Shown here: piece by piece, positions 3,710 through 25,837 of the stretch | How positions within the stretch are numbered: position 1 is the first letter of the stretch | Layout: every line of letters begins with the position of its first letter | Assembly (NCBI GenBank): GCA_004431415.1 | Contig: QPMI01000290.1 | Span: 1 to 64,000 of the forward strand | DNA: 64,000 nt | DNA from: Cyanophora paradoxa CCMP329 | Lineage: Eukaryota > Plantae > Glaucophyta | Direction: 5' to 3' | Position numbers and translations under genes: made by a program | The notes under the pieces: generated by a model | Database searches by the model: none | What the model was told of the DNA's origin: nothing | What the model saw: only the letters and a program-made list of their open reading frames with translations

Positions 3710-6700
3710 TCAGAGGATGGCGAGGTCCTCGTCGGCCCCGGCGCCGCCGACGATGGCCTCCAGGTCCGCCGCCTCCGCCGCCTCCGCGAAGGCCTCCCAG
3801 CGCGCCCCCTCCTCCGCCGGCAGGAACGCCTCCTCCCCGCCCGCCCCCGCCTGCCAGCCCCGCCCCGTCGGCGCTGGCGCGGCGCGCGAGCGGGGCGGGC
3901 GGGGCGGGGCGGGGCGGGGCGGACGGCGCGGGCGTGGGCGGCGAGATCGACGGCCTGCGCCTCCTCGTCGAGCTGCACCTCCGTAGACGGCACCGGCGGC
4001 AGCGCCGGCTCCGTCACCGGCGTCACAACCGTCGCCGGAGCGGCGAGGTTGAGGCCCGGCAGCAGCGCGTTCAGCTGCGTCACTTGCTCGCTCCTGCGCC
4101 CCCGCCGGTTGGGGCGCGGCCCGTGCGGCGGCGCGGGGCGGGGGTCGGGGCGGGGCGGACGAGAGGTTCGTGGCGGCGGCGGCGAGGATCTTGAGGGCGG
4201 AGAGGACGCTCGCGTACTCGTCGTCCTGCTCCGCGTCCGCCGCCTTCAGCGCCGCGATCTCGGCGCTCAGCGACGCGTCCTTCGCCTCTGCCGCGCCCCG
4301 CGTCAGCGCGCGCGGCGGCTGGCGCGGGGGCCGGGCCGGGGCGGGGACCGAGGGTGGCGTCGTTCTCGGCGAGGGTCTCGACCTTGTCGACGAAGACGAG
4401 CGAGTCCTTCAGCTCCTCGTCGAACCCTGCCGCCCTCCTCGCCCCCGCCGCCCCTCGCCCCCGCGCCGGCGGGGCGGGGCGCAGCCGCACCGGACTTGAG
4501 GACGAAGCGCTCCTGCAGGTCGGCCGTCGTCGTGTAGTTGTTCAGCACGTTCGCCTTCTCGTCTGCGCCCCCGCCCCCGCCCCCTCAGCCGCCGCCGGGG
4601 CGGGGCGGGGCGGGGCGGGGCGGGGCGGGGCGGGCCGGCGAGGTCCTTCTGGAGGAGGGCGACGACCTCGGCGCCGGAGATGAGCTCCTGGAGGTCCGCC
4701 TGCGCCACGTACTTCGCCGCCGCCTCCGCGTCCGTCGCGTACTCCCCCAGGCCCGCCTTGATCGCTGCCGTGGCCCCCGCCGGCTCGCCCGGGGAGGAGG
4801 GCGGCGGGGCGTGGCGGGCGGGGGCACCGGCGTCGGTGTCGCGGAGCGCGGCGACGACGTCGGACGAGTCGAGGCGCTGGTCGAGGTCTGCGCCCCGCCC
4901 CGCTCGCCCCGCGCCGGCAGCGAGGGGCGGGGCGGGGCGGACTGTGGACGCTGACGTAGGTCTCGGCGGCGTCGAGGGCCTTGAGGTAGGCCTGGAGGTC
5001 GGTGGCGAGCTTCACGTCGGCCTCCTGCAGCGCCTTCACCTCCGCCGTCTCGTCGAGGTCCGCCGTCTGCAGGTACGCCAGCTCCAGCGCCGCCGTCGTC
5101 GTGTAGTTCGACGCCAGGTCTGCCCCGCCCCTTAGGCGCGGCGGGGCGGGGCGGGCGGGGCGGCGGGGCGGACTGTTCTTGACGGAGTCGATGGAGGCGA
5201 TGAGGTCCGTCTCGGCGGCGTCGAGCGCGTCGCTCAGCTGCGCCACCTCCGTCGTCTTCGCCCGCGTCGCCAGGTCCGCCCCCAGCGCTGCCCGCCCCGC
5301 CCCCTCGCCCCGGCCCCGACCGCCCCGCCGCGGCGCCGAGCGGCGGGGCGCGCGTGCGGACCGTCGGTGGTGACCTTGACGGCGGCGGCGGCGTCGGCGA
5401 GCTTCGTGTTCACGCTCGCCGTCGACTCCTTCGTGTCGATCGCCGCCTGCAGCTCTGCAGCCGCGCAGTGAGCGACCCGCGCACTGCGCGGCGGGGCGGG
5501 GCGGGGCGGGGCGGGGCGCACCCTTGTCGGCGGCGGCGAGCGCCGCCTTGGTGTCATCGACGAGCGCCTTCGTCGCGGCGTCGTCCGCCTTCGTGTCGAT
5601 CTCCGCCTTCAGCTCTGCAGCGCCGCGCACGCGTGGGCGGCGCGGCTACGACGCAGGCCGGCGGGCCGCACCGGCGGCCTTGGCGGCAACGGCGTCGGCG
5701 GCCTTGGAGAGCTTCGAGTCGACCGAAGTGGTGTCCTCCTTCTTGTCGATGTTGGCCTGCAGCTCTGCAGCGGCGGTTGTGAGCCCCAGCGGGGCCGCGG
5801 AGCGGAGCGGCGCCGGCAGCGGGCCGGGGTAGAGCGAAGCGGACCGGTCTTGGCGTCGGCGAGGTCCTGGGCGGCGTCGGCAAACCCGTCCGTCGTCGCC
5901 TTCGCGTCCGCCTTCGTGTCGATGTTCTCCTGCAGCGCTGCGCCCCGCCCCGCGTCGGCGGCCCAGCGGCGCTGGCATGGCGGCGGCGGCGGCGGCGGCG
6001 GCGGACCGGTCTTGGCGGCGGCGAGGGCCTCGGCGGCCTTGGTGAAGTTGGCGTCCGTCTCCTGCGCGTCCGCCTTCGTATCGATCCGCTCGCCCAGGTC
6101 TGCCCCGGCCCGCGCGCCCGTCGACGTCAGGCCGCAAGCGCCTAAGTGCGGCCGGCCGCGTTCGGCGCGGGGCGGGCGGACCGGTCTTGGCGTCGGCGAG
6201 GGCGTCCGAGGCGGCCGTGAAGCGGGCGTCGACGTCGGTCTTGACCGCCTTCGTGTCAATCGCGTCCTGCAGCTCTGCGCAGACGCTCGCACCGCCGCAC
6301 GGTCTATCTCATGCAGTCCAACGGAACGCACCGGCGGCCTTGGCGGCGACAGCGTTAGCCGCATCGGCGAGCTTCGAGTCGACGCTCGTCGTGTCCTCCT
6401 TCTTGTCGATGTTCGCCTGCAGCTCTGCGATGGAAGGGGTGCGTGAGCGGCGCGACTCGAGCTCCAATGAGAGCCGCTGGAGCGCACCGGCGGCCTTGGC
6501 GGCAACGGTGGCGGCGGCGTCGGCGAGCTTCGAGTCCACGGAAGTCGTCGACTCCTTCTCGTCGATGTTCGCCTGCAGCTCTGCAGCACAGGCGCCGGCG
6601 TGAGCGCGGCGCTGGCAGGGGCAGGGGCGCGCGGGGGCGGGGCGGACCGGCGGCCTTGGCGGCGAGGGCGTCGGAGGCGTCCCCGAAGCGCGCGTCGACG

Positions 6701-7822
6701 CTCTCCTTGTCCGCCTTCGTGTCGATGCTCGCCTGCAGCTCTGCCCCGGCGCGTCGGCGGCGCCGCGCGATCCGACGCGATCGCGGGGGCGGACCGGCGG
6801 CCTTGGCGGCGGCGGCGGCGGCGGCGTCGGCGAGCTTGTCGTCGACGCTCGTCGTGTCCTCCTTCAAGTCGATGCTCGCCTGCAGCTCTGCCGCCCCCCC
6901 CGTGAGCGCCCCGACCCGACCGCCGCCTCGCGCGAGGGGCCCACCGCCGGCCTTCTCGGCGAGGGCGGAGGTGGCGGCGTCGAACTTGGCGGCGGTGTCG
7001 GCGGCGTCGGCCTTGGTCGCGATCGCCGCCTCGAGCTCGGCCTTGGCGGAGGCGAGGTCCTGCGCCGCGTCCGCGAAGTCCTCCGCCACCGCCTCCGCGC
7101 TCGCCTTCGTCTCGATCTTCCCCTCGAGCTCTGCCCCCGCCCCGCCCCTCCCCGTCACGCCCCAAGCGCCGAGGCGCGCCGGCGCGCCCGGCGCGGCGCG
7201 CGGGCTGACCGGTCTTGGCGTCGGCGAGGGCGTGCGAGGCGGCGGTGAAGCGGGCGTCGACGTCGGCCTTGTCCGCCTTCGTGTCGACGGCGTCCTGGAG
7301 GGCCGCGTCCGCCGCCTCCGCCGCCTCCTTGTTCCCCGCCACCAGCGCCTTGATCGCGGCGTCGTCCGCCTTCGTGTCGATCTCCGCCTTCAGCTCTGCA
7401 GCGCCGCGCACGCGTGGGCGGCGCGGCTACGACGCAGGCCGGCGGGCCGCACCGGCGGCCTTGGCGGCAACGGCGTCGGCGGCCTTGGAGAGCTTCGAGT
7501 CGACCGAAGTGGTGTCCTCCTTCTTGTCGATGTTGGCCTGCAGCTCTGCAGCGGCGGTTGTGAGCCCCAGCGGGGCCGCGGAGCGGAGCGGCGCCGGCAG
7601 CGGGCCGGGGTAGAGCGAAGCGGACCGGTCTTGGCGTCGGCGAGGTCCTGGGCGGCCTTGGCGGCCTTGGCGGCGGCGTCGGCGGCGGACTCCTTCGTGT
7701 CGAGCGCCTTCTGCAGCGCCGCCTCCGACTTGGCGACGTCCGCCGCGCTCGCCTTCGTCCCGATCGCCTCCTCGAGCGCTGCCGCCGCACCGGGGTGAGC
7801 AGGGGGCGCTGGAGGGGGCGGG

Positions 7823-7859
<37 letters not shown>

Positions 7860-9480
7860 TGGGGGCACCGGTCTGGGCGGCGGTGAGGGCGGCGGCGATG
7901 GAGCGGGAGGCCTCGTCGAGGGCCGTCTGGTCCGCCTTCTTCCCGATCGCCGTCTCCAGCTCTGCACACCCCGCCCGCCCCTTGAGGCCCCGCGCGGCCG
8001 GCCCCGGGGCGCGGCGCGGGGCGCACCGGCCTTGGCGTTGGAGAGGGAGGCGTTGGCGGTCTCGAGCTGCTTGGCGACGTCGGCGGCGTTGGCCTTGGCG
8101 TCGGTGAGGGCCGTCGCGGCCTTCTCGAGGAGGCCGACTTGGACGGCGATCGAGTCGTACTTGTCGACGGCGGCGTCGACCTTGGTCGTCAGGCCCTGCA
8201 CCGTCGCCAGCGTGCTGTTCAGCTCCTTCACCGTCCCCAGCAGCGACGCCTTCGACTTGTCTGCCCGCCCCGTCGAGGCCCCGCCGCGCGAAACGCGGGG
8301 CGGGGGCCGGCGCACTGACGGCCTCGTTGACGGCGGCGGCGGCCTTGGCGTCGGCGTAGGAGCGGGCCTGCGTCAGCGTGCTCGACGCCGACGCCGGGAT
8401 GTCCGTCCCCCGAATCTTCGTCGCTGCGCCCCGCCCTCGGGCGCCGCGCCCCCGAGCCGCGCCGGCGCGCGCGCGGCGCGTGCGCACCGACTTCGTTGGT
8501 GTACGTGCGGGCGGCCGAGGTCGCGTCCGCCTGCGCCGCCGTGACCGCCGCGGCGAGCCCTGCGCGCCCCCCGCCTCGGCGGCTGCGGGGGCGGGGCGGG
8601 CGGGGCGGGGCGGGGGCGGACTGGTGTCGGCGTCGGCGAGGGTCTTGACGCCGGCGTCGAAGGCGCTCTTGGGGACAAGCGTGGCGACCGTGTTCTCCAG
8701 CGACGAGATCTTCCCCGAGTTCCCTGCCCCGCCCCGCCCCCTCGCCCCGGTCCGCCGGCGCCGGCCGGCCGGGGGCCGGCGCACCGTCGGTGGTCTGGCG
8801 GACGGCGGAGAGGTCGGTCTGGAGGGTGGAGACGTCGGTCCGGAGGGGGCTCAGCCCGATCTCCATCTGCTCCATGATCTGCCCCCGCCGGCCGCCCCCG
8901 GCACGATCAGAGCCGCCGGCGTCGGGCGCGCCGGCGGGGCGGGCGGGCGCACGGCCTTGGTGAACTGCTCCCCCGTGAACTGGTTGATCCTGCCGCCGCC
9001 CCTCAGGCCCGCCCAGCGCAGCCCCGCGCGGCCCCGGGCGGCACGCACTGTTCCTGGAGGAAGTCGAGCCTGCAGGCGCGCGCCGGGGGCCGTCAGGGGG
9101 GGCCCCGCCCGCCGGACCGGGCGCGGGCACGCACTGCGGCTCATACTGCGAGTTGATGTCATCCTTGACCGTGTCCAGGTACTCCTGCAGGAACTCCAGC
9201 GCCCCGGCATCTGCCGCCCCGCCCCCTCAGCCGCGCCGCCGCCCCGCGGGGTGCCACCGCCGGCCGGCAAGCGCACTGCTGTCCGCCGCCGACGCGTCCA
9301 CCGTGAGGTCCTCGTCTGCGCCGGCACGAAAATCAGGGCCTCGACGTACGCTTGACCGCAGAGCACGGGCCGGGGGGAGGAATCTGATCAAGCGAGCCGG
9401 GGCCGCGGGGCGCCGCCCTCTCGTTCCCACGGAGATAAAAATGACTAAAGAGCTTAGAGCCGGCTCGCGGCAGGAGTGCC
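3710..9480 (-). CDS. Large multi-exon Ala/Asp/Lys-rich coiled-coil fibre protein with KAD/TKA repeats (fibre gene A); start codon unresolved
   Basis: Dozens of short exons, many of them 93-nt phase-1 modules such as ELQANIDKKEDTTSVDSKLSKAADAVAAKAA (5672-5764). Contains ARTYTN and ARSYADAK motifs and a hydrophobic stretch LSSLVIFISVG near the 5' end. Ends AFLPAEEG...EAADLEAIVGGAGADEDLAIL* (stop 3710-3712). Confidence 0.75.
5574..7656. repeat. Intragenic duplication of about 300 bp of exon-intron modules (about 5574-5876 and 7355-7656)
   Basis: Both copies carry the same exon and the same two introns (gcagcgccgcgcacgcgtgggcgg... and gcggcggttgtgagccccagc...). Confidence 0.9.
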
Positions 9481-9878
9481 ACGCCGCCGGTGGTGGCTCC
9501 GTTAATGCATGTGCGACGAAGGAGGTGGGCGGGGGTTCGAGGCCCAAGGAGCGCGGAAGCGAAGTTCGCTACTCGGCACGAACGCACCCTGCGGATACAG
9601 AGGACGCCGCGGCCCGCGAGGCGGCGAAAGGTTAGAGACGACGGACGGATATCGATTCGGGCGGTTTGGCCGTAGCGATCGGCCTGGACGCCTAGTGGAC
9701 GGTACGCACATAGGATTTAGTCACCATCGTGCTTGTCGAGGACGTCGAACGTGGCTTCGCCGGTCGGTCGGGTCGGGCTCCGAAGATAAAGGAACGCGTC
9801 CCCCCCCTCTCTGTTAGGGCCACAGTTCGGCCACTCCTCGGATCGTCTCGCCACTCGTCCGAAAGCGTGTAGGTGGCG

Positions 9879-12394
9879 ATGAAATCGACCGTGCTGAGTC
9901 TCGTGACGCTGTTCGTACTGGCCTGCGTGTCGACGTCCGTTCATGGGCAGGTCAACATCGGAGGAATCGGTACATCTTCGCAGTTCGGCCGATGGCGTAC
10001 GTTTGATTTGGAGTTTTTGTACGTGCGATCGCAGATGCCGCGGTCGCTCTTGTCTCGCCGGACGGGTCGCCCCCGGCCGAGGGCCTCGCCGTCTTCTCGC
10101 TGATGGTGCGGGCCGGACTGCCGGGCCACCCGCCGGCCGCGGGGTGACGGGGAGAAGCGGCGCACCGCTGAACGGGGCGCAGCGGTCGCTGGACGACGTG
10201 GCGTTCTCGATGAGGGGGCGGGTCTACCTGCAGGTGCTCGCCTGGCACTCGCTGTACGGCGTGGCGTCGGCGGAGTTCGTGGACGCGGAGGGCGCCAAGT
10301 ACGCCCCGGCCAGCGACGACGAGTGTCCCCTCGGCACCCTCAACGCCCGCAACTTCTACGCCGCCTGGTCCGTACCCGCCGGCCGCCCGCCGGCGCCGGC
10401 CGCGCGCCCCGCGCGGGGGCGGGGACCGAGTGGCGGGGCGCAGCTTCGCGGTGAACGCGTCGGCGTCGTTCATCGACGCAAGGAGCGGCGTCCGCAGCCG
10501 CCGCGGCGGCCTCACGCTCACCGCCGCCTCCCGCGGGCCCGCCCTCAAGCGCCCCTCCGTCTCCGCCACCTTCGAATCGGCCATCAACCTTAGTGCGCCC
10601 CGCTCCGCACCCCGCGCCCTCCCCCCGCCCCCTGCCCGCCGCCGCCGACGCGGGGCGGGGCAGCCGGCACGCCCGTGGCCTTCGCGAACCTCTTCGGCGA
10701 CAACGCGACCGCGTGCGGAGGGCCAGCCATCGGTCCGCCGCCCCGCCCGCCCCCGCTGCCGCCCCGCGCGCCGCTGGTCATGACGCCGGGGCGGGGCAGC
10801 GCTGGCGTACTTCCCCGGGGCGGGGAGCAACGTGACGGGGGCGCTGGCGGGGGCAAGCAGGCGTTCCGGGTGCTGCTCGGGGGCGGGGCGCTGCTCTCGC
10901 GCTACATCGCCGCCGCCACGCTCAACGGCGGCGAGGCCGGCGAGGCCCAGCTCGCCGCCTCCGCCTTCTCCGCCACCGTGCCCGGCCCCGCCCCCCGCCC
11001 CGCCCCGCCCCCGCCCCCGACGCCCGGGCCGACGCGGGGCGGCAGCCGCTCAAGCCGGGGCGGTGCTCGGGGGGCGGGGAGCAGGCGTACTGGGTGCCCG
11101 GCTTCACGAACCCCTGCGCCCCGGCGGCCTCGGCCGACGCCGTCAAGCCCCTGCCCCTCGTGCGCCGGCCCCGCCCCGCCTCTCGGGGTTGTGGAGGGGC
11201 GACGGGGGCGGGGCGGCGCAGCTCGCGGGGGTGCCGTCGGTGGAGGTGCAGAACGGGTACGGCAAGGGCGCCGCCTACTGGGGCCCCGACGGCTCCCGGC
11301 CCCTCCTCGCCCTCCACACCACCGAGGCGCCCCCGCCCCCGCCCCCCGCCCCGCCCGCCCCGCCGCCCCTCACGCCCCGGCGGGGCAGTTCGGGGCGCCG
11401 GGCTTCAAGAACGGGGCCCTGTACGGGCGCTTCTCGCCGGTGTACCCGCCCAAGTCCCCGCTGCAGACCTGCGCGACGGCGGCCGGCAAGAAGACCTGCT
11501 CCTTCCTCTTCCCCGACGCCAACAGCGTCCCCACGCCCCGCACCGTGCGCCGCGCCGCGCCGCGCCGGGCGGGGCCGGGGCGCGGGGCGGGGCTCAGGCG
11601 GGGGGCGGGGCAGTCGTGCCGGGCGGAGACGAACCCCGCGTCGCTCCTCTTCTCCCTCTACACCCTCAACTGCGCCGCCCTCTCCCCCGCCCAGGCCCGC
11701 CCGCACCCGCCCCGCCCCCCGCCCCCTCCAGCCGCCCCTCACGCGCGCGCAGCTGGCGGCCGGCGCGGCGGTCGTGGCGGCGGCGGCGGGCGCTGCCCCG
11801 GCGAGGTCGCGCTTGCGTGCGCGAACACCGCTTCGGCGGGCCCCGCCACCGTTGCTGCCCCGGCGCCGGGGCGGGGCGGAGGAGGCGGTGGCGGCGGCCA
11901 AGTCGGCGGAGCTGCCGGCGGCGAAGGCCAAGACCGGCTCGGGCCCCGGCGCCCGCTTCTACGCCACCTTCGCCCCGGGAGCCGGCGCCCTCGGCCAGGC
12001 CGTGCGGCCCCGCCCGCCCACCCCGCCGCCCCCCGCCGCGGGGCGTGACGCGGGGCGGGGCAGGCGGCGCGGTCGTTCCTGGCGGCGGCGGCGGGGGAGG
12101 CGGGGGCGGTGGCGGGAGCGCTGGCGGGGCGATGAACGTGACGGGGACGCGGGGCGGCTGACGGTGGCCGGCCTCGCCGGCGGCCTCACCCAGGACGCCC
12201 TCGTCGACCCCGCCCGCCAGGGTGCCCCCGCCCCGCCCCGCCCCCGGCCCCGCCCCGCCCCGCTCAGCGCCCGGCCCCCGGCGGCAGGCAACGCGGACTA
12301 CTACATCGGGCGGGAGAGCGGGGCCGCGCTGGCCGCCCCCTCCTGGGCCCTCGCCCTCGCCCTCGCATCCCTCCTCGCTCTCCTCTCCCGCTAG
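9879..12394 (+). CDS. Secreted, probably GPI-anchored cell-surface protein of unknown family (multi-exon)
   Basis: N-terminal signal peptide MKSTVLSLVTLFVLACVSTSVHG/Q; scattered Cys and N-x-S/T sequons (NAS, NAT, NVT); C-terminus ESGAALAAPSWALALALASLLALLSR* resembles an omega site plus hydrophobic tail. Confidence 0.7.
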
Positions 12395-13287: not shown

Positions 13288-16200
13288 CCGCAACGACGAC
13301 TTATGTGGATACGAAGGTTTCGGCCCTTGCGAGTGAAGTCGACAAGAAGCTTGAGAACCGCCCGAACTTCGCCACCTTCGAGGGTCTGCCACCCCGCCCC
13401 CGCTTCTCCCGCCCGCGTTCGCTCCCTTGCGCGCGCGCTGTTCTAACCACGGGAACGTGCGCCGGGACGCCTCCCTCGACCCCGCAGTCGTCAAGAGTGC
13501 GTACACGTGGATCAAATCGCACGCCCCGCCGCCGTCTCGCCTGATCGTCTCCCGGCCCCCGTCTTGCCGCGTCTTTCCCGCGCCGCACAGATGCTGCCGA
13601 GGACGCCACAGACTCGGTGGCGGGCAAGGCGTCGGAGACGGACCTCGCCCAGAAGATCGGCGCCCTCGAGACGTTCGTCGAGAAGTCCGTCGCCGATCTG
13701 AGCGGCAAGGTCGAGGACGACCTCAAGGTGACAAACACCGGCGGCGGCGAGTTGCCGGTTTCAAGGCTCACGAGACGCGCAGGGAGCCGTCTCTCAAACG
13801 TACCTCGACTCTCAGGTCGCGCAGCTCGACAAGAGTCCGCGCTGCCCGCCGCGACCCCCTCTCGCGCCTGCGCGCACCCCCGACACCGGCTGCCGCAGCG
13901 CTGACGACGAAGATCACCGCGGCGGCGAACGAGACGAAGGCGGCGTGCAAGATCGACCCGACCGGTGCGCCGCCGTTGCCGCCGGCCTCGCCACGGCATG
14001 GGCCCGCGCATGCGCGTCAGCGTCGACGTCGTCGCTGACGGCAGGCGTGCGCAGTGACGAGCCGCATCGACCAGCTCGTCAAGAACTCGGTCACCAGTGC
14101 GCCCGCCCCGGCGCCCGCGCGCGGCGGGCATCTGCAGCGCCGGGGCGGGGCCTGATCATGAGGCCGGGGCAGCGCACCTGGCGGCGCAGCAGACGGAGAT
14201 CGACGGGCTGAAGACGTCGGTGGGGACCAAGGCGGACGACGTGGAGACCAAGGGCGAGCTGGCCAAGGTCCACGGCAAGATCGCCGAGCTCGACGCCTCC
14301 ACCGACTCCCGTATCGTCGGTCCGCCCCTGCCCCGCGCCCCGCCCCCCGGGATCGGGGCGACGAGGGGCGACAGCGATCAAGGAGCTCGCCGAGACGAAG
14401 GCCGCCTCGACCGACCTCACCGCCGCCAACCGCGAGATCGCCGGTCCGCCCGCCCCGCCCCCCTCCCCAGCTCCGGCCCCGCGGCCGCCACACCGGCCCC
14501 GCTCACTCCGCCGCAGACCTCCAGACGGGCCTCAGCACCACCGACGCCAGTGCGCGGGGCGGGACGAGGGGGGCGCGGGGGCGAGCGGGGGCGTGATCAT
14601 GACGCGGGGCGGTCGCAGCGCTGAAGAACCTGATCGAGAAGTCGGAGACGCTGGCGGTGGGGGCGGACGTGGGGGCCGCCCTGGAGGCCGTCAACGAGCG
14701 CATCACCAAGCTCGGGGCGGACACTGACGCTGCCCTCCGCGGTCCGCCCCGCCCCGCCCCGCGCGCCCGCCCCGCCTCACCTGCACGCCGCCGGCAGATG
14801 TGAACGGGGCGGTGAGCACCAAGGCGGAGCAGTCCGCCCTCGACGCCACCAACGAGAGCCTCTCCGGCGCGCCCCCGGCCTCGCCGCCCCCGCCCCGCCT
14901 CGCCTCCCCTGACCGCCCCGCAGACCTCCGGAGCGCCCTCGGCGTCAAGGGCGAGGGTGCGCTCCCCGCGCCCGGATGCAACGCGCGGTCGCGGCGCGGC
15001 GGGGCTGACGTGCCGGCGCAGAGCTCGGGCGCCTGGCCGACGTCGTCGCCACCAAGGCGAACCAGGAGGAGACGGACGGCAAGATCGCCGCCGCGCTCGA
15101 CAAGGCCGTCGAAGTCGAGAAGTGGGCCGGCAACCAGTTCGCGCGTGCGCGCCCCGGTCGGCCGCCCCGGGCGGGCGGGGCCGACGGGGGCGGGCGGGGG
15201 CGCAGAGGCGGCGGAGGTGGTGGCGACCAAGGCGTCGCAGGAGGACCTCAGCGCCCTCGCCGACCGCGTAGGCGACGGCGAGCGCCTCGCCGCCGACCAC
15301 GCCTCCAGTCCGCTCCCCCCCCGCCCTGCCGCCCCGCCGCGTCTCACGGGCGGGGCGGGGCGGCAGAGCTGGGGGCGCTGCGCGGCGACGTGGACGCGAA
15401 GGCGGACGGCGCCCTCACGAAGGACGCGATCGCCGACGTCGGCGCCCGCGTCGACGCCCTCGCCGCGCAGGCCGACCAGGGCTTCGACGGTGCGCCCCGC
15501 TCTGCTCTGCGCCCCGCCGCGCCCCGCTCGCCACTCAAGTGTGCGCGCGCCAGGCATCTCGCGCGCCCTCGAGACCAAGCTCGACAAGGAGGCCGCGGAA
15601 GCCGCCGCCACCAGTGCGCATGCGCCCCGCGACGCCGGCCGCCGGGCCGCCGCCTCCGATGACGGCGCCGCGCGGCGCAGAGGTCGACGAGCGCCTCCTC
15701 GCCGTCGAGTCTGGTGCGCCGCAGCGCTGCGCCGCTCCTCGCCGCCGGGGGCGAGCGGGACGCAGGCCTCGTCGACGCGCACGACAAGGGCAGCGCCAAC
15801 GAGAGCAGCATCCAGCGTGCGCCCGGCCCGGCGCCGGCACCGCGCAGCGCGCGTGGCGGGGCCGGAGTTGAGGCGGGGGGCCCTGGCAGAGCTGAACGAG
15901 GGCCTGGCGGCGGCGGTGGCGGCGCAGGGGGCCCTCGTCTCGAAGGAGGACCTCTCCCAGGCCCTCCTCAGCGCCCTCGACCCCGTCCACAGCGGTCCGC
16001 CACCCCGCCCCCCGACCCCCCGCTCCCGCTGTCCCGCCCTCCCCTGAAGTCGACGTTGGCGCTTGGCGGCAGATGCAAAGGCGGCGGGGGAGCGGATCGG
16101 GCAGCTCGAGGAGCGGGCGGAGAAGGCGGAGACTCGCATCTCTGGGGCCGAGGGGGAGCTGGGCAAGTTGCACAGCGCCGTCCCGTCCCTGGCCACGCAC

Positions 16201-19200
16201 GACGGCGCGCCCCGGCCTGCCGCTCGCCGCCCCCGCAGGGGCCGGGCGTGACGCGGGGGGCGCAGAGGTGGACGAGAAGGTCGCCTCGGCCATCGAGTTC
16301 GCCAAGCAGCAGGTCGCCCCCGTCAGCGCCGGTCCGTGCCCGGGGCGCGGGGGCGCGCGGGCCCGGGGCGCCGGGGGCGACGGCGTCTGAGAGGGGGCGG
16401 GCAGAGCTGAGCACCTTGTCGGAGTCGACGGCCGACAAGCTCGGCTCGCTCGACGGCCGCCTTGAGGGCGTCGAGCGCAGCATCCCCACCCTCGCCACCG
16501 AGGACTGTGCGCCCGTCCCGCCACCCTTGCCCCACGTTGCCCCGTGCCGACCCTCGACCCGCAGCCGTCGCCGACCGTCTCGCGGCCGCGGAGCGCGACG
16601 TCGATGGGAAGATCGCCGACGTCCGCTCCGGTGCGCGGCGGCGCGCGGGGCGCGGCGGCGGCGGGGCGCGGGCCGACGCGGGGCGGGGCGGGCAGAGCTG
16701 GGGCAGGCGAACGAGGTGGCGAACGCGCGTTTCGAGGGCCTGAGCGCCGACATTGCCGGCATCAACGTGAAGCTCCCCGACTTCGCCACCAACGATGGTG
16801 CGTCCCGCCGGCCTTCCACGCCGGCTGGAAACGCGTGCTGACGGCAGCGGCGCGCAGCGCTGGCGGGCGCGGTCTCGGATGCGCAGTCGGCGCTGCGCGA
16901 GAGCATGGCGGGCGTCTCGCGGGCTCTCGAGACCAAGGCCGACCTGAACGAGACTAACGATGCCCTCGCCACCCTCAAGTCCGGTGCGGCCGGCCGCGCC
17001 CCTCCCCGCGCGGCTGGCGGCTGAACGGGCGGGGCAGGGCTCGAGGAGAACGCCGCCGCGGACTCGCAGCAGGAGGAGATGCTGCTGGAGAAGATCGAGA
17101 CTCTGCTGCAGCGCGTGGTGGCCCTCGAGACCGTCGACAAGGAGCACGGCCAGGCGATGGCGGCCGCGCAGCAGGCCAACGAGGCGCAGGAGGCGGCCAT
17201 CGCCTCCAACGCGTCCTTCGCCGAGCAGGTCAACGCCGCCGCCGTCGCGGCGCAGGGCGACGTCGACGCGCTCGCCGCCAAGTACAACGCGAGCACCGTC
17301 GCCACCAACGCCGCCGTGGCCGAGGCGCAGTCGACGGCGGACGCGGCAGCGAAGGCGGTGGCCGACCTCAAGCTCAAGCAGGCCGCCGACGACAACGCGA
17401 CCAACGACCGCATCGCGGCCGCCGAGGACAGGCTCGCCGGCCTCGCCGGCGACGCCCAGTCGGCGGCGGAGCGCGCCCAGGCCGACGTGGACGCGCTGGA
17501 GGCAAAGCAGGCCGCCGACGCGGAGAACCTCGCGGACGCCGTCGCCGCCGCTAAGGGCGTCGCCGACAAGGCCGTCCACGACGCCACCGTCGCCCAGAAC
17601 ACCGCGGACGACGCGGCGACGGCGGCCAAGGCGGCGCACGCGGCGGCGAGCGCGGCGCAGGGCGACGTCGACGCGCTGCAGGAGCCGGTGACGAAGGCGA
17701 CGGCGGCGGCGACGGAGGCGCTGGAGCGCTCGAAGGGCGCCGAGGCGACGGCCGGGGAGGCCAAGGAGGCCGCCGAAGGCGCGCAGCTGGCTGCACGCAC
17801 CGCCGAGGGCGAGGCGACCAAGGCGGCGACGTCGGCCTCCGAGTCCAAGTCGGCCGCCGAGCTGGCGGCTGCCGACGCGTCCGCCGCCAGGGAGTCCGCT
17901 GGTGTCGCCGAGGGCAAGGCGGTCGCCGCGCAGGAGGCCGCTGCAGACGCCAAGGCCGCCGCCCTCTCGTCGGAGAAGGGCGCCGGTGCCGCAAAGGTCG
18001 CGGCCGACCAGGCGGCCGGGAGCGCCGAGACGGCAAGCAAGCACGCCCAGACTGCGGGGGACAAGGCGGCAGCGGCTAGCACTTCGGCCGACACGGCAGG
18101 CATCGAGGCTGATAAGGCGACCACCGAGGCTGGCAAGGCGGCGGCGTCAGCGTCGGATGCGGGCGTCGAGGCTGGCAAGGCGGCCACCGAGGCTGGCAAG
18201 GCGGCGGCGTCGGCAGAGGATGCGGGCTTCGAGGCTGGCAAGGCGGCCACTGAGGCCGGCAAGGCGGCGGCGTCAGCGTCGGATGCGGGCGTGGAGGCTG
18301 GCAAGGCGGCCACCGAGGCTGGCAAGGCGGCGGCGTCGGCGTCGGATGCGGGCGTCGAGGCTGGCAAGGCGGCCACCGAGGCTGGCAAGGCGGCGGCGTC
18401 GGCGGAGGATGCGGGCGTCGAGGCTGGCAAGGCGGCCACTGAGGCCGGCAAGGCGGCGGCGTCAGCGGCGGATGCGGGCGTCGAGGCTGGCAAGGCGGCG
18501 ACCGAGGCTGGCAAGGCGGCGGCGTCGGCGTCGGATGCGGGCGTCGAGGCTGGCAAGGCGGCCACCGAGGCTGGCAAGGCGACCACCGAGGCTGGCAAGG
18601 CGGCGGCGTCGGCGTCGGATGCGGGCATCGAGGCTGGCAAGGCGGCCACCGAGGCTGGCAAGGCGGCGGCGTCGGCAGAGGATGCGGGCGTCGAGGCTGG
18701 CAAGGCGGCCACCGAGGCTGGCAAGGCGGCGGCGTCAGCGTCGGATGCGGGCGTCGAGGCTGGCAAGGCGGCCACCGAGGCTGGCAAGGCGGCGGCGTCG
18801 GCGTCGGATGCGGGCGTGGAGGCTGGCAAGGCGGCCACCGAGGCTGGCAAGGCGGCGGCGTCGGCGTCGGATGCGGGCGTCGAGGCTGGCAAGGCGGCCA
18901 CCGAGGCTGGAAAGGCGACCACCGAGGCTGGCAAGGCGGCGGCGTCGGCGTCGGATGCGGGCGTCGAGGCTGGCAAGGCAGCCACCGAGGCGGGCAAGGC
19001 GGCGGCGTCGGCGTCGGATGCGGGAGTGGAGGCTGGCAAGGCGGCCACCGAGGCGGGCAAGGCGGCCACTGAGGCGGGCAAGGCGGCGGCGTCGGCGTCG
19101 GATGCGGGCGTGGAGGCTGGCAAGGCGGCCACCGAGGCGGGCAAGGCGGCCACCGAGGCGGGCAAGGCGGCGGCGTCGGCGTCGGATGCGGGCGTCGAGG

Positions 19201-22200
19201 CTGGCAAGGCGGCCACCGAGGCTGGCAAGGCGGCGGCGTCGGCGTCGGATGCGGGCGTGGAGGCTGGCAAGGCGGCCACCGAGGCTGGCAAGGCGGCGAC
19301 CGAGGCTGGCAAGGCGGCGGCGTCGGCGGAGGATGCCGGCGTCGAGGCGGGCAAGGCGGCCACCGAGGCTGGCAAGGCGGCGGCGTCGGCGTCGGATGCG
19401 GGCGTCGAGGCTGGCAAGGCGGCCACTGAGGCGGGCAAGGCGGCGGCGTCGGCAGAGGATGCGGGCGTCGAGGCAGGCAAGGCGGCCACCGAGGCGGGCA
19501 AGGCGGCAGCGTCGGCGGAGGATGCGGGCGTCGAGGCTGGCAAGGCGGCCACCGAGGCTGGCAAGGCGGCGGCGTTGGCGTCGGATGCGGGCGTCGAGGC
19601 TGGCAAGGCGGCCACCGAGGCTGGCAAGGCGACCACCGAGGCTGGCAAGGCGGCGGCGTCGGCGTCGGATGCGGGCATCGAGGCTGGCAAGGCGGCCACC
19701 GAGGCTGGCAAGGCGGCGGCGTCGGCAGAGGATGCGGGCGTCGAGGCTGGCAAGGCGGCCACCGAGGCCGACAAGGCGGCGGCGTCAGCGTCGGATGCGG
19801 GCGTCGAGGCTGGCAAGGCGGCCACTGAGGCCGACAAGGCGGCGGCGTCAGCGTCGGATGCGGGCGTCGAGGCTGGCAAGGCGGCGGCGTCGGCGTCGGA
19901 TGCGGGCGTCGAGGCTGGCAAGGCGGCGGCATCGGCGAAGGATGCGGGCGTGGAGGCTGGCAAGGCCGCCACCGAGGCGGGCAAGGCGGCCACTGAGGCG
20001 GGCAAGGCGGCGGCGTCGGCGGAGGATGCGGGCGTCGAGGCTGGCAAGGCGGCCACCGAGGCTGGCAAGGCGGCGGCGTCGGCGTCGGATGCGGGCGTTG
20101 AGGCTGGCAAGGCGGCCACCGAGGCGGGCAAGGCGGCGGCGTCGGCGTCGGATGCGGGCGTGGAGGCTGGCAAGGCGGCGGCGTCGGCGTCGGATGCGGG
20201 CGTGGAGGCTGGCAAGGCGGCCACCGAGGCTGGAAAGGCGACCACCGAGGCTGGCAAGGCAGCGGCGTCGGCGTCGGATGCGGGCGTCGAGGCTGGCAAG
20301 GCAGCCACCGAGGCGGGCAAGGCGGCGGCGTCGGCGTCGGATGCGGGAGTGGAGGCTGGCAAGGCGGCCACCGAGGCGGGCAAGGCGGCCACTGAGGCGG
20401 GCAAGGCGGCGGCGTCGGCGTCGGATGCGGGCGTGGAGGCTGGCAAGGCAGCCACCGAGGCGGGCAAGGCGGCCACCGAGGCTGGCAAGGCGGCGGCGTC
20501 GGCGTCGGATGCGGGCGTCGAGGCTGGAAAGGCGGCCACCGAGGCTGGCAAGGCGGCGGCGTCGGCGGAGGATGCGGGCGTGGAGGCTGGCAAGGCGGCC
20601 ACCGAGGCTGGCAAGGCGACCACGGAGGCTGGCAAGGCGGCAGCGTCGGCGGCGGATGCAGGCATCGAGGCGGGCAAGGCGGCCACCGAGGCTGGCAAGG
20701 CGGCGGCGTCGGCGTCGGATGCGGGCGTCGAGGCGGGCAAGGCGGCCACCGAGGCTGGCAAGGCGGCGGCGTCGGCGGAGGATGCGGACGTGGAGGCTGG
20801 CAAGGCGGCTACTGAGGCAGGCAAGGCGGCCACCGAGGCTGGCAAGGCGGCAGCCTTGGCGGAGAATGCAGGCGTCGAGGCTGGCAAGGCGGCCACCGAG
20901 GCTGGCAAGGCGGCGGCGTCGGCGGAGGATGCGGGCGTCGAGGCTGGCAAGGCGGCCGCTGAGGCTGGCAAGGCGGCGGCGTCGGCGTCGGATGCGGGCG
21001 TGGAGGCTGGCAAGGCGGCCACCGAGGCTGGCAAGGCGGCGGCGTCGGCGTCGGATGCGGGCGTCGAGGCTGGCAAGGCGGCCACCGAGGCTGGCAAGGC
21101 GGCCACCGAGGCTGGCAAGGCGGCGGCGTCGGCGGAGGATGCGGGCGTCGAGGCTGGCAAGGCGGCCGCTGAGGCTGGCAAGGCGGCGGCGTCGGCGTCG
21201 GATGCGGGCGTGGAGGCTGGCAAGGCGGCCACCGAGGCTGGCAAGGCGGCGGCGTCGGCGTCGGATGCGGGCGTCGAGGCTGGCAAGGCGGCCACCGAGG
21301 CTGGCAAGGCGGCCACCGAGGCTGGCAAGGCGGCGGCGTCAGCGTCGGATGCGGGCGTGGAGGCTGGCAAGGCGGCCACTGAGGCTGGCAAGGCGGCGGC
21401 GTTGGCTTCAGATGCGGGCGTGGAGGCTGGCAAGGCGGCCACCGAGGCTGGCAAGGCGGCGGCGTCGGCGTCGGATGCGGGCGTGCAGGCTGGCAAGGCG
21501 GCCACCGAGGCTGGCAAGGCGGCGGCGTCGGCGTCGGATGCGGGCGTGGAGGCTGGCAAGGCGGCCACCGAGGCAGGCAAGGCGGCGACCGAGGCTGGCA
21601 AGGCGGCGGCGTCGGCGTCGGATGCGGGCGTCGAGGCGGGCAAGGCGGCGGCGTCGGCGTCGGATGCGGGCGTCGAGGCTGGCAAGGCGGCCACCGAGGC
21701 TGGCAAGGCAGCGGCGTCGGCGTCGGATGCGGGCGTCGAGGCTGGCAAGGCGGCCACCGAGGCCGGCAAGGCAGCGGCGTCGGCGTCGGATGCGGGCGTC
21801 GAGGCTGGCAAGGCGGCCACCGAGGCTGGCAAGGCGGCGGCGTCGGCGTCGGATGCGGGCGTCGAGGCTGGCAAGGCGGCGGCGTCAGCTTCAGATGCGG
21901 GCGTGGAGGCTGGCAAGGCGGCCACCGAGGCTGGCAAGGCGGCGGCGTCGGCGTCGGATGCGGGCGTCGAGGCTGGCAAGGCCGCAGCTGAGGCAGGCAA
22001 GGCGGCGGCGTCGGCGTCGGATGCGGGCGTGGAGGCTGGCAAGGCGGCCACCGAGGCTGGCAAGGCGGCGGCGTCGGCGTCGGATGCGGGCATCGAGGCT
22101 GGCAAGGCGGCCACCGAGGCTGGCAAGGCGGCGGCGTCGGCGTCGGATGCGGGCATCGAGGCTGGCAAGGCGGCGGCCTCGGCGTCGGATGCGGGCGTCG

Positions 22201-23020
22201 AGGCTGGCAAGGCGGCCACCGAGGCTGGCAAGGCGGCGGCGTCAGCGTCGGATGCGGGCGTCGAGGCTGGCAAGGCGGCCACCGAGGCTGGCAGGGCAGC
22301 GGCGTCGGCAGAGGATGCGGGCGTCGAGGCTGGCAAGGCGGCCACCGAGGCGGGCAAGGCGGCGGCGTCGGCGTCGGATGCGGGCGTCGAGGCGGGCAAG
22401 GCGGCCACTGAGGCTGGCAAGGCGGCGGCGTCGGCGTCGGATGCGGGCGTCGAGGCGGGCAAGGCGGCCACCGAGGCGGGCAAGGCGGCGGCGTCGGCGT
22501 CGGATGCGGGCGTCGAGGCTGGCAAGGCGGCCACCGAGGCAGGCAAGGCGGCGGCGTCGGCTGCGGAGGCGGTGAGCAGCCTGAGCACGCTGACGGCTAA
22601 GGTGGACCAGCTCGCCAATGTGACGGGCACGTGGAACCTCACTACTGTGCTCGCCAATCTCGACAAGGACATCGACGCCCTGGACGTTCGCGTCGCGGCG
22701 CTGGAGCCCGCGGCTACGACGTCGGTGCCGCCGGAGGGGACGGCGGCGCGCGTGGACGAGGGGGTGCTGGAGGTGATGGACGCCCTCGAGGCCGCCCTCG
22801 GCGGCACTGGCGGCGACGAGGCCGACGCCTTCGTGCCGCTGCCCGCGGAGGCGGCGGGGCGCCTGCTGGACCCCACCGAGGCCGCCGACCTCGACGCCGA
22901 CAATGTCATCGCCGAGGTGCCCTGCCCGCCCAGCCCGCGCCTGCGCCCTGCCCCCGCCCGCTCACGCCCCGCCTGCAGCTCGTGGGCGCCGACGAGGAGT
23001 CGGACCTCGCCATGCTCTAA
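13288..23020 (+). CDS. Giant coiled-coil fibre protein (fibre gene B): many short KAD/ATK-type exons, then one exon of about 5.9 kb carrying an Ala-rich heptad array; true 5' end lies upstream and is unresolved
   Basis: Exons include ATTTYVDTKVSALASEVDKKLE, AGKASETDLAQKI, VGTKADDVETKGEL, VATKASQEDL and VSKEDL. The large exon spans about 17038-22917 (ORF 17079 frame). The last exon after a gt..ag intron gives ...DADNVIAE|LVGADEESDLAML*. Confidence 0.8.
18100..22560 (+). repeat. Coding minisatellite of 21-bp units (EAGKAAT / EAGKAAA / SASDAGV), mostly grouped as 63-bp triplets; about 210 heptads
   Basis: The tandem array gaggctggcaaggcggccacc-gaggctggcaaggcggcggcg-tcggcgtcggatgcgggcgtc is directly visible; variation is mainly synonymous and the frame is never broken. 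Confidence 0.97.
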
Positions 23021-23287
23021 GCGTGTAGGGAAGGAAGCTGCGGCTGGAGCCGGAGTTCTCCATGCGAGCTCCCCCAGATGGCGACTTGCGTGGGAGGCTA
23101 TTTTCTCGCGATGCATCAGCTGCTCCCGAGAGATCGGGTCTGTGCACGCGTGCTCATCGAGCTTCAGATGTGCAAAAGCACGCTTAACTTGAGCTGGGCG
23201 CTGCGCCGCAGCCTGCGCGTGCTCGGAAACGCCGTGACGGGACCCTCGGCCCGGCGGGTCGACGTTACTCAGGCAATTCACAATTCA

Positions 23288-25837
<2,550 letters not shown>

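What the first reader, a model, noticed from the sequence alone, without database searches (positions are those of the whole stretch)
3710..23020. Candidate extracellular-fibre locus: two giant paralogous coiled-coil genes with a shared C-terminal signature, flanking a GPI-type protein
Seen in sequence: the two outward-facing repetitive genes end in a matching motif that is visible only after splicing. Gene A ends AFLPAEEG...EAADLEAIVGGAGADEDLAIL* and gene B ends AFVPLPAEAAG...EAADLDADNVIAELVGADEESDLAML*. In both, a Pro/Thr linker precedes the motif (PVTEPALPPVPSTEVQLDEE and EPAATTSVPPEGTAARVDEG). A signal-peptide plus GPI-tail gene lies between them. Inference: this is a three-gene module for a secreted or cortical filament (for example an extrusome, cell covering or adhesion fibre), and GADE-x(0,2)-DLA[IM]L* is a shared sorting, processing or assembly tag. 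I do not recognise the family.
Basis: partly seen in the sequence, partly recalled or inferred. Interest (0 to 1): 0.85.

Follow-up and report, generated by a model that had tools for sequence, protein, structure and literature searches.

The report
Two leaderless coiled-coil rods, shared tail
Two neighbouring, expressed genes of the alga Cyanophora paradoxa encode very long, probably three-stranded rod proteins that have no export signal and no known relatives, yet end in the same short acidic tail, which most likely docks or addresses both rods to one place in the cell; the function is untested.

Summary
Gene A (minus strand, about 1,200 aa, over 30 exons) and gene B (plus strand, about 2,700 aa) face outwards. 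Both end in G-A-D-E-x(0,2)-D-L-A-[IM]-L-stop, preceded by AF[LV]P..AE and EAADL[ED]A. This similarity beats shuffles, and the motif occurs nowhere else in the window. A gene with a signal peptide and a GPI-like tail lies between them.

RNA contigs of four runs show all three genes spliced and fix both N-termini. Neither A nor B has a signal peptide or a membrane segment, so classical secretion is not supported.

A is built of 31-residue units, mostly one per 93-nt exon. Each carries an I-x-T-K-A-D nonad like the beta-layers of trimeric autotransporter stalks. A three-copy model scored 0.88 against 0.02 for the best control. B adds 211 uninterrupted Ala-core heptads, about 220 nm of helix.

Apart from the tail, the two bodies are not alignable. 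No relatives were found in Pfam, PHROGs, the PDB, 1.84 billion representative proteins or IMG/VR.

Best reading: orphan trimeric rods with a conserved C-terminal docking or address peptide. The three-gene module is unproven.

The scan has noted, on other DNA of this genome, leaderless families with acidic tails and giant fibre genes. I did not check those notes.

The parts
3710..9727 (-). Gene A coding region: about 1,200-1,240 aa in about 31-34 exons. The 5' exon runs on beyond 9727 towards about 9830.
   Evidence: Splice-aware model from scripts. The first five exons and one further junction (8953 to 8878) are confirmed by RNA contig joints and loose ends in four runs. The start codon at 9725-9727 is the first ATG of the 5' exon.
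3710..3850 (-). Last exon of gene A: the acidic tail ending GADEDLAIL-stop.
   Evidence: No Pfam family.
3925..4093 (-). Penultimate exon of gene A, with the Pro/Thr linker (PVTEPALPPVPSTE).
   Evidence: It does not align with B.
5362..7961 (-). Repeat region of gene A: 31-residue units, mostly one per 93-nt phase-1 exon, each carrying an I-x-T-K-A-D nonad.
   Evidence: Alignment A1 of 16 units has L1, I5 and K8 (nearly) invariant. The motif occurs 13 times against 0.31 expected. TRF finds a period of 147-156 nt, which equals exon plus intron.
7210..7395 (-). Double-unit exon of gene A, used for the homotrimer model.
   Evidence: complex prediction with 3 copies: score 0.88 against 0.02 for the best control, pLDDT 94. 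The copies are in register and parallel, with unbroken contacts at residues 7-12 and 38-46, which are the two TKAD motifs.
5526..5825 (-). Recent internal duplicate of 7307-7606 (94% identical, introns included).
   Evidence: the repeat finder.
9316..9708 (-). First intron of gene A (393 nt). It places the 5' exon head-to-head against the middle gene.
   Evidence: The joint is seen in all four RNA runs. Its ends read TG..AG or GT..CA, one base short of a standard intron.
9879..12394 (+). Middle gene: a secreted-type protein of about 520-570 aa with a signal peptide and a GPI-like hydrophobic tail. It equals EukProt model tig00001234_g7725.t1.
   Evidence: Spliced RNA contigs. Exon reconstruction. 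P0121 is 99% identical on the exons. The 19-residue hydropathy maximum of 2.05 lies at the C-terminus. No Pfam family.
12731..23020 (+). Gene B transcript: about 2,690 aa in about 28 exons, ATG at 13117.
   Evidence: RNA joints from 12894 to 14619 in four runs. There is an in-frame stop upstream of the ATG. A 3.3-kb RNA contig reaches, by its length, from the 5' exons to about the start of the tandem array (my arithmetic).
13288..16983 (+). Intron-rich N-terminal third of gene B, with TKAD-type motifs and mostly phase-1 exons.
   Evidence: The motif occurs 7 times against 0.17 expected. Exon-wise BLASTP to A's units gives weak matches that share one register, E = 0.002-0.1.
13488..13496 (+). 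A 9-nt micro-exon of gene B.
   Evidence: The nine letters lie between the two sides of the joint 13383 to 13591 in four runs. AG and GT flank them in the window.
17038..22916 (+). Giant exon of gene B (1,959 codons): 345 aa of ordinary coiled coil, then the heptad array, then the C-terminal region.
   Evidence: It has no stop codon.
18095..22572 (+). Tandem array of gene B: 211 heptads of type EAGKAA[AT] or SA[SE]DAG[VI].
   Evidence: TRF finds 63-nt units. Of 1,505 residues, 1,477 parse as heptads, and the unit lengths are 21 (43 times), 28 (14 times) and 14 (6 times). AlphaFold2 folds 200 aa as a single helix with pLDDT 85.8.
22917..22978 (+). Last intron of gene B (62 nt, GT..CAG), inferred.
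   Evidence: Sequence. Without splicing the frame runs into 90 Arg/Pro/Ser/Cys-rich codons. With splicing, the 13 codons match A's tail. It was not checked with RNA.
22979..23020 (+). Last exon of gene B: LVGADEESDLAML-stop.

Best explanation
Genes A and B encode orphan, leaderless, very acidic, Ala-rich rod proteins.

Structure. Each most likely forms a parallel three-stranded coiled coil. A would be about 160 nm long and B about 380 nm. In A, and in the N-terminal third of B, the helices are broken at regular intervals by I-x-T-K-A-D nonads. These are the sequence signature of the beta-layers that Hartmann et al. 2016 described in trimeric autotransporter stalks and phage fibres. B also has 211 in-phase heptads with alanine at the core positions.

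The tail. Both rods end in a flexible Pro/Thr linker, an acidic stretch and a short terminal peptide, G-A-D-E-x(0,2)-D-L-A-[IM]-L-COOH. I take this tail for a C-terminal docking or address peptide. A trimer would show three copies at one end of the rod, and these would tie both rods to the same partner or the same place in the cell.

Shown: the gene structures at the 5' ends, expression, the absence of a leader, the repeat architecture, and the tail similarity.

Inferred: the trimer (motif plus model), the rod lengths, the terminal splice of B, and every statement about what the tail does.

The GPI-type neighbour is most likely an unrelated gene that shares a two-way promoter region with A.
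For: Tail:
- The similarity is non-random, anchored at both stop codons and unique in the window.
- The bodies do not align. A's repeat profile scores 6.8 bits on B against a shuffle maximum of 6.4, and A's penultimate exon finds no match in B.
- The intron positions differ. A has an intron before the tail exon; B has one inside the tail. The tail was therefore kept by selection rather than copied recently.
- AlphaFold2 gives low confidence for the linker and tail, with short helices only (pLDDT 53.8). That fits a flexible peptide motif.

Rods:
- TKAD-type motifs occur 13 times against 0.31 expected in A, and 7 times against 0.17 expected in B's N-terminal part.
- The core spacing in A's unit is 4-9-4-3-4-3-4, which sums to 31. 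It mirrors IENKADKAD-V of OMP100 (PMC4786415).
- The three-copy model scores 0.88, against 0.02 for the best of 3 controls. The runs agree in at least 98% of contacts and the pLDDT is 94. This mark was reached by 21 of 30 solved homomers and 0 of 23 solved single chains, but the calibration used two copies, not three.
- B's unit lengths are all multiples of 7, and the array is predicted as a continuous helix.

Leaderless:
- RNA joints define both 5' ends, and the starts follow from the sequence.
- The highest 19-residue hydropathy is 1.27 in A and 0.88 in B.

All three genes give spliced contigs in four RNA-like runs.
Against: - No partner, location or phenotype is known, so the docking role is inference only.
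- The oligomer state rests on a motif and on one model. The model was told to use three copies; two and four copies were not compared.
- Trimeric beta-layer coiled coils are otherwise known from extracellular or viral fibres, which sits badly with a cytosolic rod.
- B's terminal splice was not checked with RNA.
- The tail is short and made of residues that are common in these proteins.
- No second species is available to show that the tail is conserved.
Confidence: 0.45

Rival explanations
1. A and B are extracellular or surface fibres, such as flagellar hairs, mucilage or a covering. They would be exported without an N-terminal leader, with the acidic-hydrophobic C-terminus acting as the export or sorting signal. 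The GPI protein would be their membrane anchor or assembly factor.
For: - Trimeric beta-layer coiled coils are typical of surface and viral fibres (PMC4786415).
- C. paradoxa has two kinds of flagellar hairs of unknown composition (PMC6704402).
- The GPI-type gene lies head-to-head with A and is present in the same RNA assemblies.
- Other notes of this scan report leaderless families with shared acidic tails in this genome (unchecked).
- An acidic residue followed by a few hydrophobic residues at the very end recalls bacterial type I secretion signals. This is my own recollection and was not tested.
Against: - Neither A nor B has a signal peptide or a membrane segment.
- Each of the two models has a single Cys.
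- No C-terminal export route of this kind is known in eukaryotes.
- Adjacency means little in a genome with a mean gene spacing of 770 bp and overlapping UTRs (PMC6704402).
Confidence: 0.2
2. The tail is only an inherited remnant of one ancestral C-terminus, or a compositional look-alike. It has no function of its own, and A and B are generic structural coiled coils.
For: - The tail is short and rich in A, D, E, G and L, which are common in both proteins.
- BLASTP gives only E = 8e-4.
- No further carriers were found.
Against: - The match is collinear in three blocks and ends exactly at both stops.
- Shuffles that keep the composition rarely reach it (36 of 20,000 and 2 of 5,000), and no internal window does.
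- Everything else has diverged beyond alignment.
Confidence: 0.15
3. A and B are domesticated fibre genes of one of the endogenous viruses of this alga. The shared tail would be the module that once fixed the fibres to a capsid or vertex.
For: - Earlier notes of the scan list several endogenous virus-like elements with phage-type fibre genes, and giant fibre genes, in this genome (unchecked).
- Viral fibres are leaderless trimers.
- There is a weak PHROG tail-fibre hit (E = 0.0029) and a weak match to a PDB tail-collar fibre (E = 0.54).
Against: - Each gene has 28 to over 30 spliceosomal introns, host-like composition and ordinary host neighbours such as a UDP-glucose pyrophosphorylase gene.
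- The IMG/VR scan found no relative.
- The weak hits are not significant.
- Fibres usually attach to capsids by their N-terminus (my own knowledge).
Confidence: 0.1

Closest known systems
Alpha/beta coiled coils: stalks of trimeric autotransporter adhesins (Actinobacillus OMP100), Thermosinus Tcar0761, some phage tail fibres (Hartmann et al. 2016, PMC4786415)
   Same: Gene A has a nine-residue insert of the type I-x-[NT]-K-A-D-x-x-x-[VI] in a heptad or hendecad background, repeated at a fixed distance. The three-copy model is a parallel, in-register trimer with unbroken contacts at the motif.
   Different: The host is a eukaryote and the genes are rich in introns, with mostly one repeat per exon. 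There is no signal peptide and no membrane-anchor domain. No sequence match reaches significance in Pfam, PHROGs or the PDB. The period is 31 residues and is specific to this gene.
Trimeric fibres of phages and giant viruses
   Same: Both are leaderless, long, repetitive and probably trimeric rods. They share motifs of the type Y-x-D/T and T-K-A-D.
   Different: There is no significant homology and no recognisable receptor-binding or chaperone domain at the C-terminus. These are host genes with many introns.
Coiled-coil silks of bees, ants and hornets (PMC6403662)
   Same: They are long helical proteins with alanine rather than Leu or Ile in the predicted core positions. B's 211 heptads of type EAGKAA[AT] or SA[SE]DAG[VI] are of this sort.
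   Different: The silks are secreted proteins of about 300 aa that form four-stranded coiled coils. B is a leaderless protein of about 2,700 aa. There is no homology.
Golgins and other coiled-coil tethers anchored by a short C-terminal domain
   Same: The layout is the same: a very long cytosolic coiled coil whose extreme C-terminal 40-50 residues are the conserved part that could fix the rod to a target.
   Different: There is no GRIP or other Pfam domain in either tail. Golgins are dimers. The resemblance is one of layout only and comes from my own knowledge.
Other leaderless C. paradoxa families with shared acidic C-terminal tails (scan notes s1-528621, s1-579412, s1-511205, s1-549498)
   Same: They are in the same genome, have no leader, and end in an acidic tail tipped with hydrophobic residues.
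   Different: The reported tips are Leu-Leu or H-x-L-[L/C], not D-L-A-[IM]-L. I could not read those loci, so any kinship is untested.

Membership tests
Alpha/beta (beta-layer) trimeric coiled coils as in TAA stalks | Nonad or hexad insert with a K-A-D or T-K-D-D type motif in a heptad background | tested here: met
   The motif occurs 13 times against 0.31 expected in A, and 7 times against 0.17 in B's N-terminal part. The core spacing is 4-9-4-3-4-3-4. The reference motifs are in PMC4786415.
Alpha/beta (beta-layer) trimeric coiled coils as in TAA stalks | Parallel homotrimer | tested here: inconclusive
   The three-copy model scores 0.88 against 0.02 for the best control. This is a model's own confidence, and other copy numbers were not tried.
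Trimeric autotransporter adhesins / phage tail fibre families | Sequence homology to a described family or a solved chain | tested here: not met
   Pfam finds nothing. The best PHROGs hit has E = 0.0029 on a biased stretch. The best PDB hit has E = 0.54. A profile of 16 units finds 0 PDB hits. IMG/VR yields none.
Trimeric autotransporter adhesins | Signal peptide and C-terminal membrane-anchor domain | tested here: not met
   The N-termini fixed by RNA have no leader. The highest 19-residue hydropathy is 1.27 in A and 0.88 in B. The C-terminus is an acidic tail.
GPI-anchored proteins (middle gene) | N-terminal signal peptide, plus a C-terminal hydrophobic stretch preceded by small residues | tested here: met
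   The start is MKSTVLSLVTLFVLACVSTSVHG. The end is ...GRESGAALAAPS followed by 16 hydrophobic residues. The hydropathy maximum of 2.05 lies at the C-terminus.
GPI-anchored proteins (middle gene) | Anchor attachment shown by a trained predictor or by experiment | not testable with these tools
   No GPI or signal-peptide predictor is on hand.
Epiplastins of the Cyanophora membrane skeleton (PMC6212826) | Medial domain with acid-base dyads and VPV motifs, predicted beta-strand or coil | tested here: not met
   A and B contain no VPV. B's array is predicted fully helical.
Peroxisomal PTS1 | C-terminal tripeptide of type [SAC]-[KRH]-[LM] | tested here: not met
   The tails end A-I-L and A-M-L after an acidic stretch. 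The consensus is from my own knowledge.
Golgin GRIP-domain tethers | GRIP domain at the extreme C-terminus | tested here: not met
   Neither C-terminal piece matches any Pfam family.
Aculeate coiled-coil silks | Secreted proteins of about 300 aa forming a four-stranded coiled coil, with an Ala-rich core | tested here: not met
   Only the Ala-rich core is shared. B has no leader and is ten times as long.

The most novel reading that the evidence does not exclude
The acidic tail tipped with D-L-A-[IM]-L may be one version of a glaucophyte-specific C-terminal address tag. Such a tag would send proteins without an N-terminal leader to a cortical or extracellular structure by a route not yet described. 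The cargo would include these giant three-stranded rods and the other acidic-tail families noted in this genome. A and B would then be the first candidates for fibres delivered in that way.
Probability: 0.15. Interest if true: 0.85.

Novelty: new variant of a known kind. Interest (0 to 1): 0.5.

Why it matters
Beta-layer coiled coils have been described in bacterial adhesins, some archaeal and bacterial proteins and phage fibres. The defining paper does not mention eukaryotes at all. Here the same sequence signature appears in expressed, intron-rich nuclear genes of an early-branching alga, mostly with one structural repeat per exon. This gives a clean case of a fibre grown by duplicating exon-plus-intron units.

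The conserved C-terminal peptide on two otherwise unalignable giant rods is a testable handle. A tail-peptide pull-down or fraction proteomics could name the structure they belong to, in an organism whose flagellar hairs, cortical skeleton and sutures still lack assigned proteins. If the tail proves to be one of several C-terminal tags on leaderless proteins in this genome, it would point to an undescribed sorting route.

Tried and rejected
Searches that found nothing:
- Pfam on 10 exon pieces of A and B, on 9 exon pieces of the middle gene, and on the full published model P0121.
- PHROGs gave only weak, non-significant hits.
- The PDB by sequence and by a profile of 16 repeat units.
- The search for homologous proteins with the first 345 residues of B's giant exon, length range 1,077-3,428 aa.
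- An exhaustive phmmer of B's last 117 exon-encoded residues against 1.84 billion representatives gave 0 hits at E of 0.001 or less. A 117-residue biased query has little power there, so distant tail carriers are not excluded.
- ESM Atlas features for B's C-terminus (best 0.75) and for the middle protein (best 0.76). Both are below the chance level the tool states.
- An IMG/VR scan with a 61-aa exon of A found none.
- The search of earlier findings by sequence came back blank, which means nothing.

Ideas rejected:
- A's repeat profile does not detect B's exons above shuffles.
- A's penultimate exon does not align with B. The shared part is therefore only the last 45-50 residues.
- PTS1, GRIP, epiplastin and membrane-anchor readings fail their defining features (see Membership tests).
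- My guess that the gene at 1-2750 has a BRCT domain was not borne out by Pfam.

Full report
WHAT THE WINDOW IS. The stretch is extremely GC-rich, 65-82% in 1-kb windows. It is full of short GC-rich GT..AG introns, so every frame stays open and plain ORF lists mislead. Earlier notes of this scan name the organism as the glaucophyte Cyanophora paradoxa. I found independent support: the middle gene matches, at 99% on its exons, the EukProt model tig00001234_g7725.t1 (P0121). That name follows the contig naming of the 2019 PacBio assembly. The paper on that assembly reports 67.6% GC, 9.2 introns per gene with a mean length of 86 bp, 770 bp between genes and many overlapping UTRs (PMC6704402).

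GENE MODELS AND EXPRESSION. I built provisional models with a small splice-aware dynamic programme. I then checked the central 6 kb (8950-14900) against the contigs of four runs. The records only guess that these runs are RNA, but they show GT..AG joints throughout, so they are spliced RNA.

All three genes give spliced contigs in all four runs. Gene A (minus strand) has introns at 8990-9048, 9070-9134, 9211-9276 and 9316-9708. Its 5' exon therefore lies at 9709 and above, head-to-head with the middle gene, and in one run the two transcripts were assembled into a single contig. A loose end at 8953 spells the start of the next predicted exon, which confirms that junction as well.

Gene B (plus strand) starts with a non-coding exon ending at 12894. 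Its further exons start at 13047 and 13288, followed by a 9-nt micro-exon (13488-13496), an exon starting at 13591, and so on to 14619. These differ from the model in only a few bases.

By its length, a 3.3-kb contig reaches from B's 5' exons to about position 18,100, where the tandem array begins. The intron-rich part and the giant exon therefore belong to one transcript. This is my arithmetic on the record coordinates.

B's last intron and A's last intron therefore remain sequence inferences.

THE OBSERVATION. Three collinear blocks are shared: AF[LV]P..AE, then EAADL[ED]A, then G-A-D-E-x(0,2)-D-L-A-[IM]-L-stop.
- BLASTP of A's last exon against the end of B's giant exon gives E = 8e-4.
- For the last 13 residues, only 36 of 20,000 shuffles that keep the composition reach the observed score. 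None of about 3,750 13-residue windows from the bodies of the two proteins does. For the upstream 36 residues, 2 of 5,000 shuffles reach it.
- DLA[ILMV]L-stop occurs in all six frames of the 64-kb window only at these two stops.
- Without splicing, B's frame would run into 90 Arg/Pro/Ser/Cys-rich codons typical of wrong frames here. With the 62-nt intron removed, 13 codons appear that match A's end.

HOW FAR THE TWO GENES ARE RELATED. Only the last 45-50 residues align. A's penultimate exon finds nothing in B. A profile of 16 repeat units of A scores 6.8 bits on B's N-terminal part, against a shuffle maximum of 6.4.

Exon-by-exon BLASTP gives many weak matches (E = 0.002-0.1) that share one register: the start of an A unit falls on residue 4 of a B exon, just before the T-K-A motif. 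Both genes use mostly phase-1 exons. This hints at a common origin of the exon unit but does not show it.

The intron positions around the tail differ. A has an intron before the tail exon, and B has one inside the tail. The tail is therefore not a recent copy. It has stayed while the rest drifted, which argues for selection on it.

WHAT THE PROTEINS LOOK LIKE.

Gene A (about 1,200-1,240 aa). Its core consists of 31-residue units, mostly one per 93-nt phase-1 exon. TRF sees the exon-plus-intron unit as a 147-156-nt tandem period, and a 300-nt piece including introns was duplicated recently at 94% identity. In the alignment of 16 units, L1 and K8 are invariant and I5 is nearly so. The hydrophobic positions are spaced 4-9-4-3-4-3-4.

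The nine-residue step is I-D-T-K-A-D-x-x-x-V. It mirrors IENKADKAD-V of Actinobacillus OMP100, the founding example of a beta-layer. There a two-residue insertion into a parallel trimeric coiled coil forces three short strands that turn the chains by 120 degrees (PMC4786415). Motifs of this type occur 13 times in A (0.31 expected from shuffles) and 7 times in the N-terminal 731 residues of B (0.17 expected).

A three-copy model of the double-unit exon 7210-7393 scored 0.88, with 0.02 for the best of three controls. The runs agreed in at least 98% of contacts and the partner's pLDDT was 94. This mark was reached by 21 of 30 solved homomers and by 0 of 23 proteins solved as single chains. The calibration held two copies, not three, so the counts hold only roughly, and a pass may reflect likeness to solved complexes. 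The copies lie parallel and in register. The contacts are unbroken exactly at residues 7-12 and 38-46, the two TKAD motifs, and follow a 3-4 spacing elsewhere. That is what a beta-layer fibre should give. I did not compare other copy numbers.

Gene B (about 2,690 aa). The motif-bearing exons are followed by 345 residues of ordinary Ala-rich coiled coil. Then comes an array in which 1,477 of 1,505 residues parse as 211 heptads of type EAGKAA[AT] or SA[SE]DAG[VI]. The higher units are 21, 28 or 14 residues long (43, 14 and 6 times), always multiples of seven. Keeping the heptad phase over 4.4 kb of tandem DNA is what a continuous coiled coil demands. AlphaFold2 folds 200 residues of the array as a single helix (pLDDT 85.8). 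With Ala at both core positions, the nearest analogue is the coiled-coil silk of bees and hornets (PMC6403662).

At 0.1485 nm per residue, the rods would be about 160 nm (A) and 380 nm (B) long.

The C-terminal 117 exon-encoded residues of B fold with low confidence (pLDDT 53.8). The model shows the end of the coil, a disordered Pro/Thr linker, one helix, and then a disordered acidic stretch with two short helices.

NO LEADER. The spliced 5' end of B has an in-frame stop just before the ATG at 13117, and the protein starts MSAATTTYVDTK. A's 5' exon contains no ATG before 9727, and the protein starts MVTKSYDEDL. Neither start is hydrophobic. The highest 19-residue hydropathy is 1.27 in A and 0.88 in B. 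Both proteins are strongly acidic and each model has a single Cys. Classical secretion is therefore not supported.

THE MIDDLE GENE. It has a textbook signal peptide, several N-x-S/T sites, ten Cys and a C-terminal hydrophobic stretch preceded by small residues. GPI anchoring is plausible but was not tested with a predictor.

The RNA contigs carry single extra bases after 10848, 11795, 11867, 11872 and 12142. The window, and the published model built on the same assembly, therefore carry frameshift artefacts here. P0121 contains Arg/Pro-rich stretches at exactly these places. With the five bases added in a script, one open frame runs from the signal peptide to the tail. The protein has no Pfam family and no relative in the search made.

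RELATIVES. None were found for A, B or the tail. The searches were Pfam, PHROGs, the PDB (single sequence and profile), one word-indexed protein search, the exhaustive search of 1.84 billion representatives with B's C-terminus, the ESM Atlas and IMG/VR. The weak tail-fibre hits (E = 0.0029 and 0.54) are not evidence of membership. These searches went exon by exon, by reference.

READING. I take A and B for orphan, leaderless, probably trimeric rods whose only conserved part is a flexible acidic C-terminal peptide. A trimer would show three such peptides at one end. The simplest job for them is to dock both rods to a common partner or to address them to a common place. I give this reading a probability of 0.45.

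In its favour, beta-layer trimers are otherwise surface or viral fibres, the alga has hairs of unknown make-up, and the scan has noted other leaderless acidic-tail families in this genome (unchecked, on DNA I could not read). A tail without a function of its own gets 0.15, and a viral origin gets 0.1.

VERDICT. This is a new eukaryotic, exon-modular, leaderless variant of a known kind of fibre, with a conserved tail that makes its cell biology testable.

Noticed in passing
window 10848, 11795, 11867, 11872, 12142: RNA contigs of two runs carry one extra G or C after each of these places, all inside the middle gene. The assembly seems to have homopolymer frameshifts here. The published model tig00001234_g7725.t1 shows Arg/Pro-rich junk stretches at the same spots.
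   Followed up: partly
window 13488-13496: Gene B has a 9-nt micro-exon (TCGTCAAGA) inside the 207-nt gap between the exons ending at 13383 and starting at 13591. It is present in the contigs of all four RNA runs.
   Followed up: yes
window 9316-9708: The first intron of gene A is skipped in all four runs, but its ends read TG..AG or GT..CA, one base off a standard GT..AG. This may be a one-base assembly error or a non-standard splice.
   Followed up: partly
window 9709-9968: The 5' exon of gene A (minus strand) and the 5' end of the middle gene (plus strand) abut or overlap. In run X15 they were assembled into one 2,668-nt contig. This points to a two-way promoter region of about 100-150 bp.
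   Followed up: partly
window 12785-13340: If transcription of gene B starts before 12785, its leader holds an upstream ATG. That ATG opens a frame of about 90 codons across two introns, which overlaps the main start at 13117 in another frame.
   Followed up: no
window 9300-9322: Near its N-terminus, gene A reads Y-D-E-D-L-T-V, which echoes its own tail A-D-E-D-L-A-I-L. The two places share 11 identical bases. This may be chance.
   Followed up: no
window 15968-23281 (minus strand) and other frames over gene B: A stop-free antisense frame of 2,437 codons and a 1,557-codon Arg-rich sense frame lie over gene B. These are the shadow frames expected at this GC content. They are a trap for gene callers and recall the 'bidirectional ORFs' reported for this genome.
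   Followed up: no
window 23285-24958 (minus strand): The downstream neighbour of gene B is a spliced UDP-glucose pyrophosphorylase gene (PF01704 relatives). The best match is 94% identical to a Logan transcript protein. A second C. paradoxa model, tig00001049_g6659.t1, is only 69% identical and is thus a paralogue.
   Followed up: partly
window 1-2750 (plus strand): This stretch reaches 81-86% GC and carries a Lys/Arg/Glu/Ala-rich open frame. No Pfam family matches, and my guess of a BRCT-like piece near 1500-1700 was not confirmed.
   Followed up: partly
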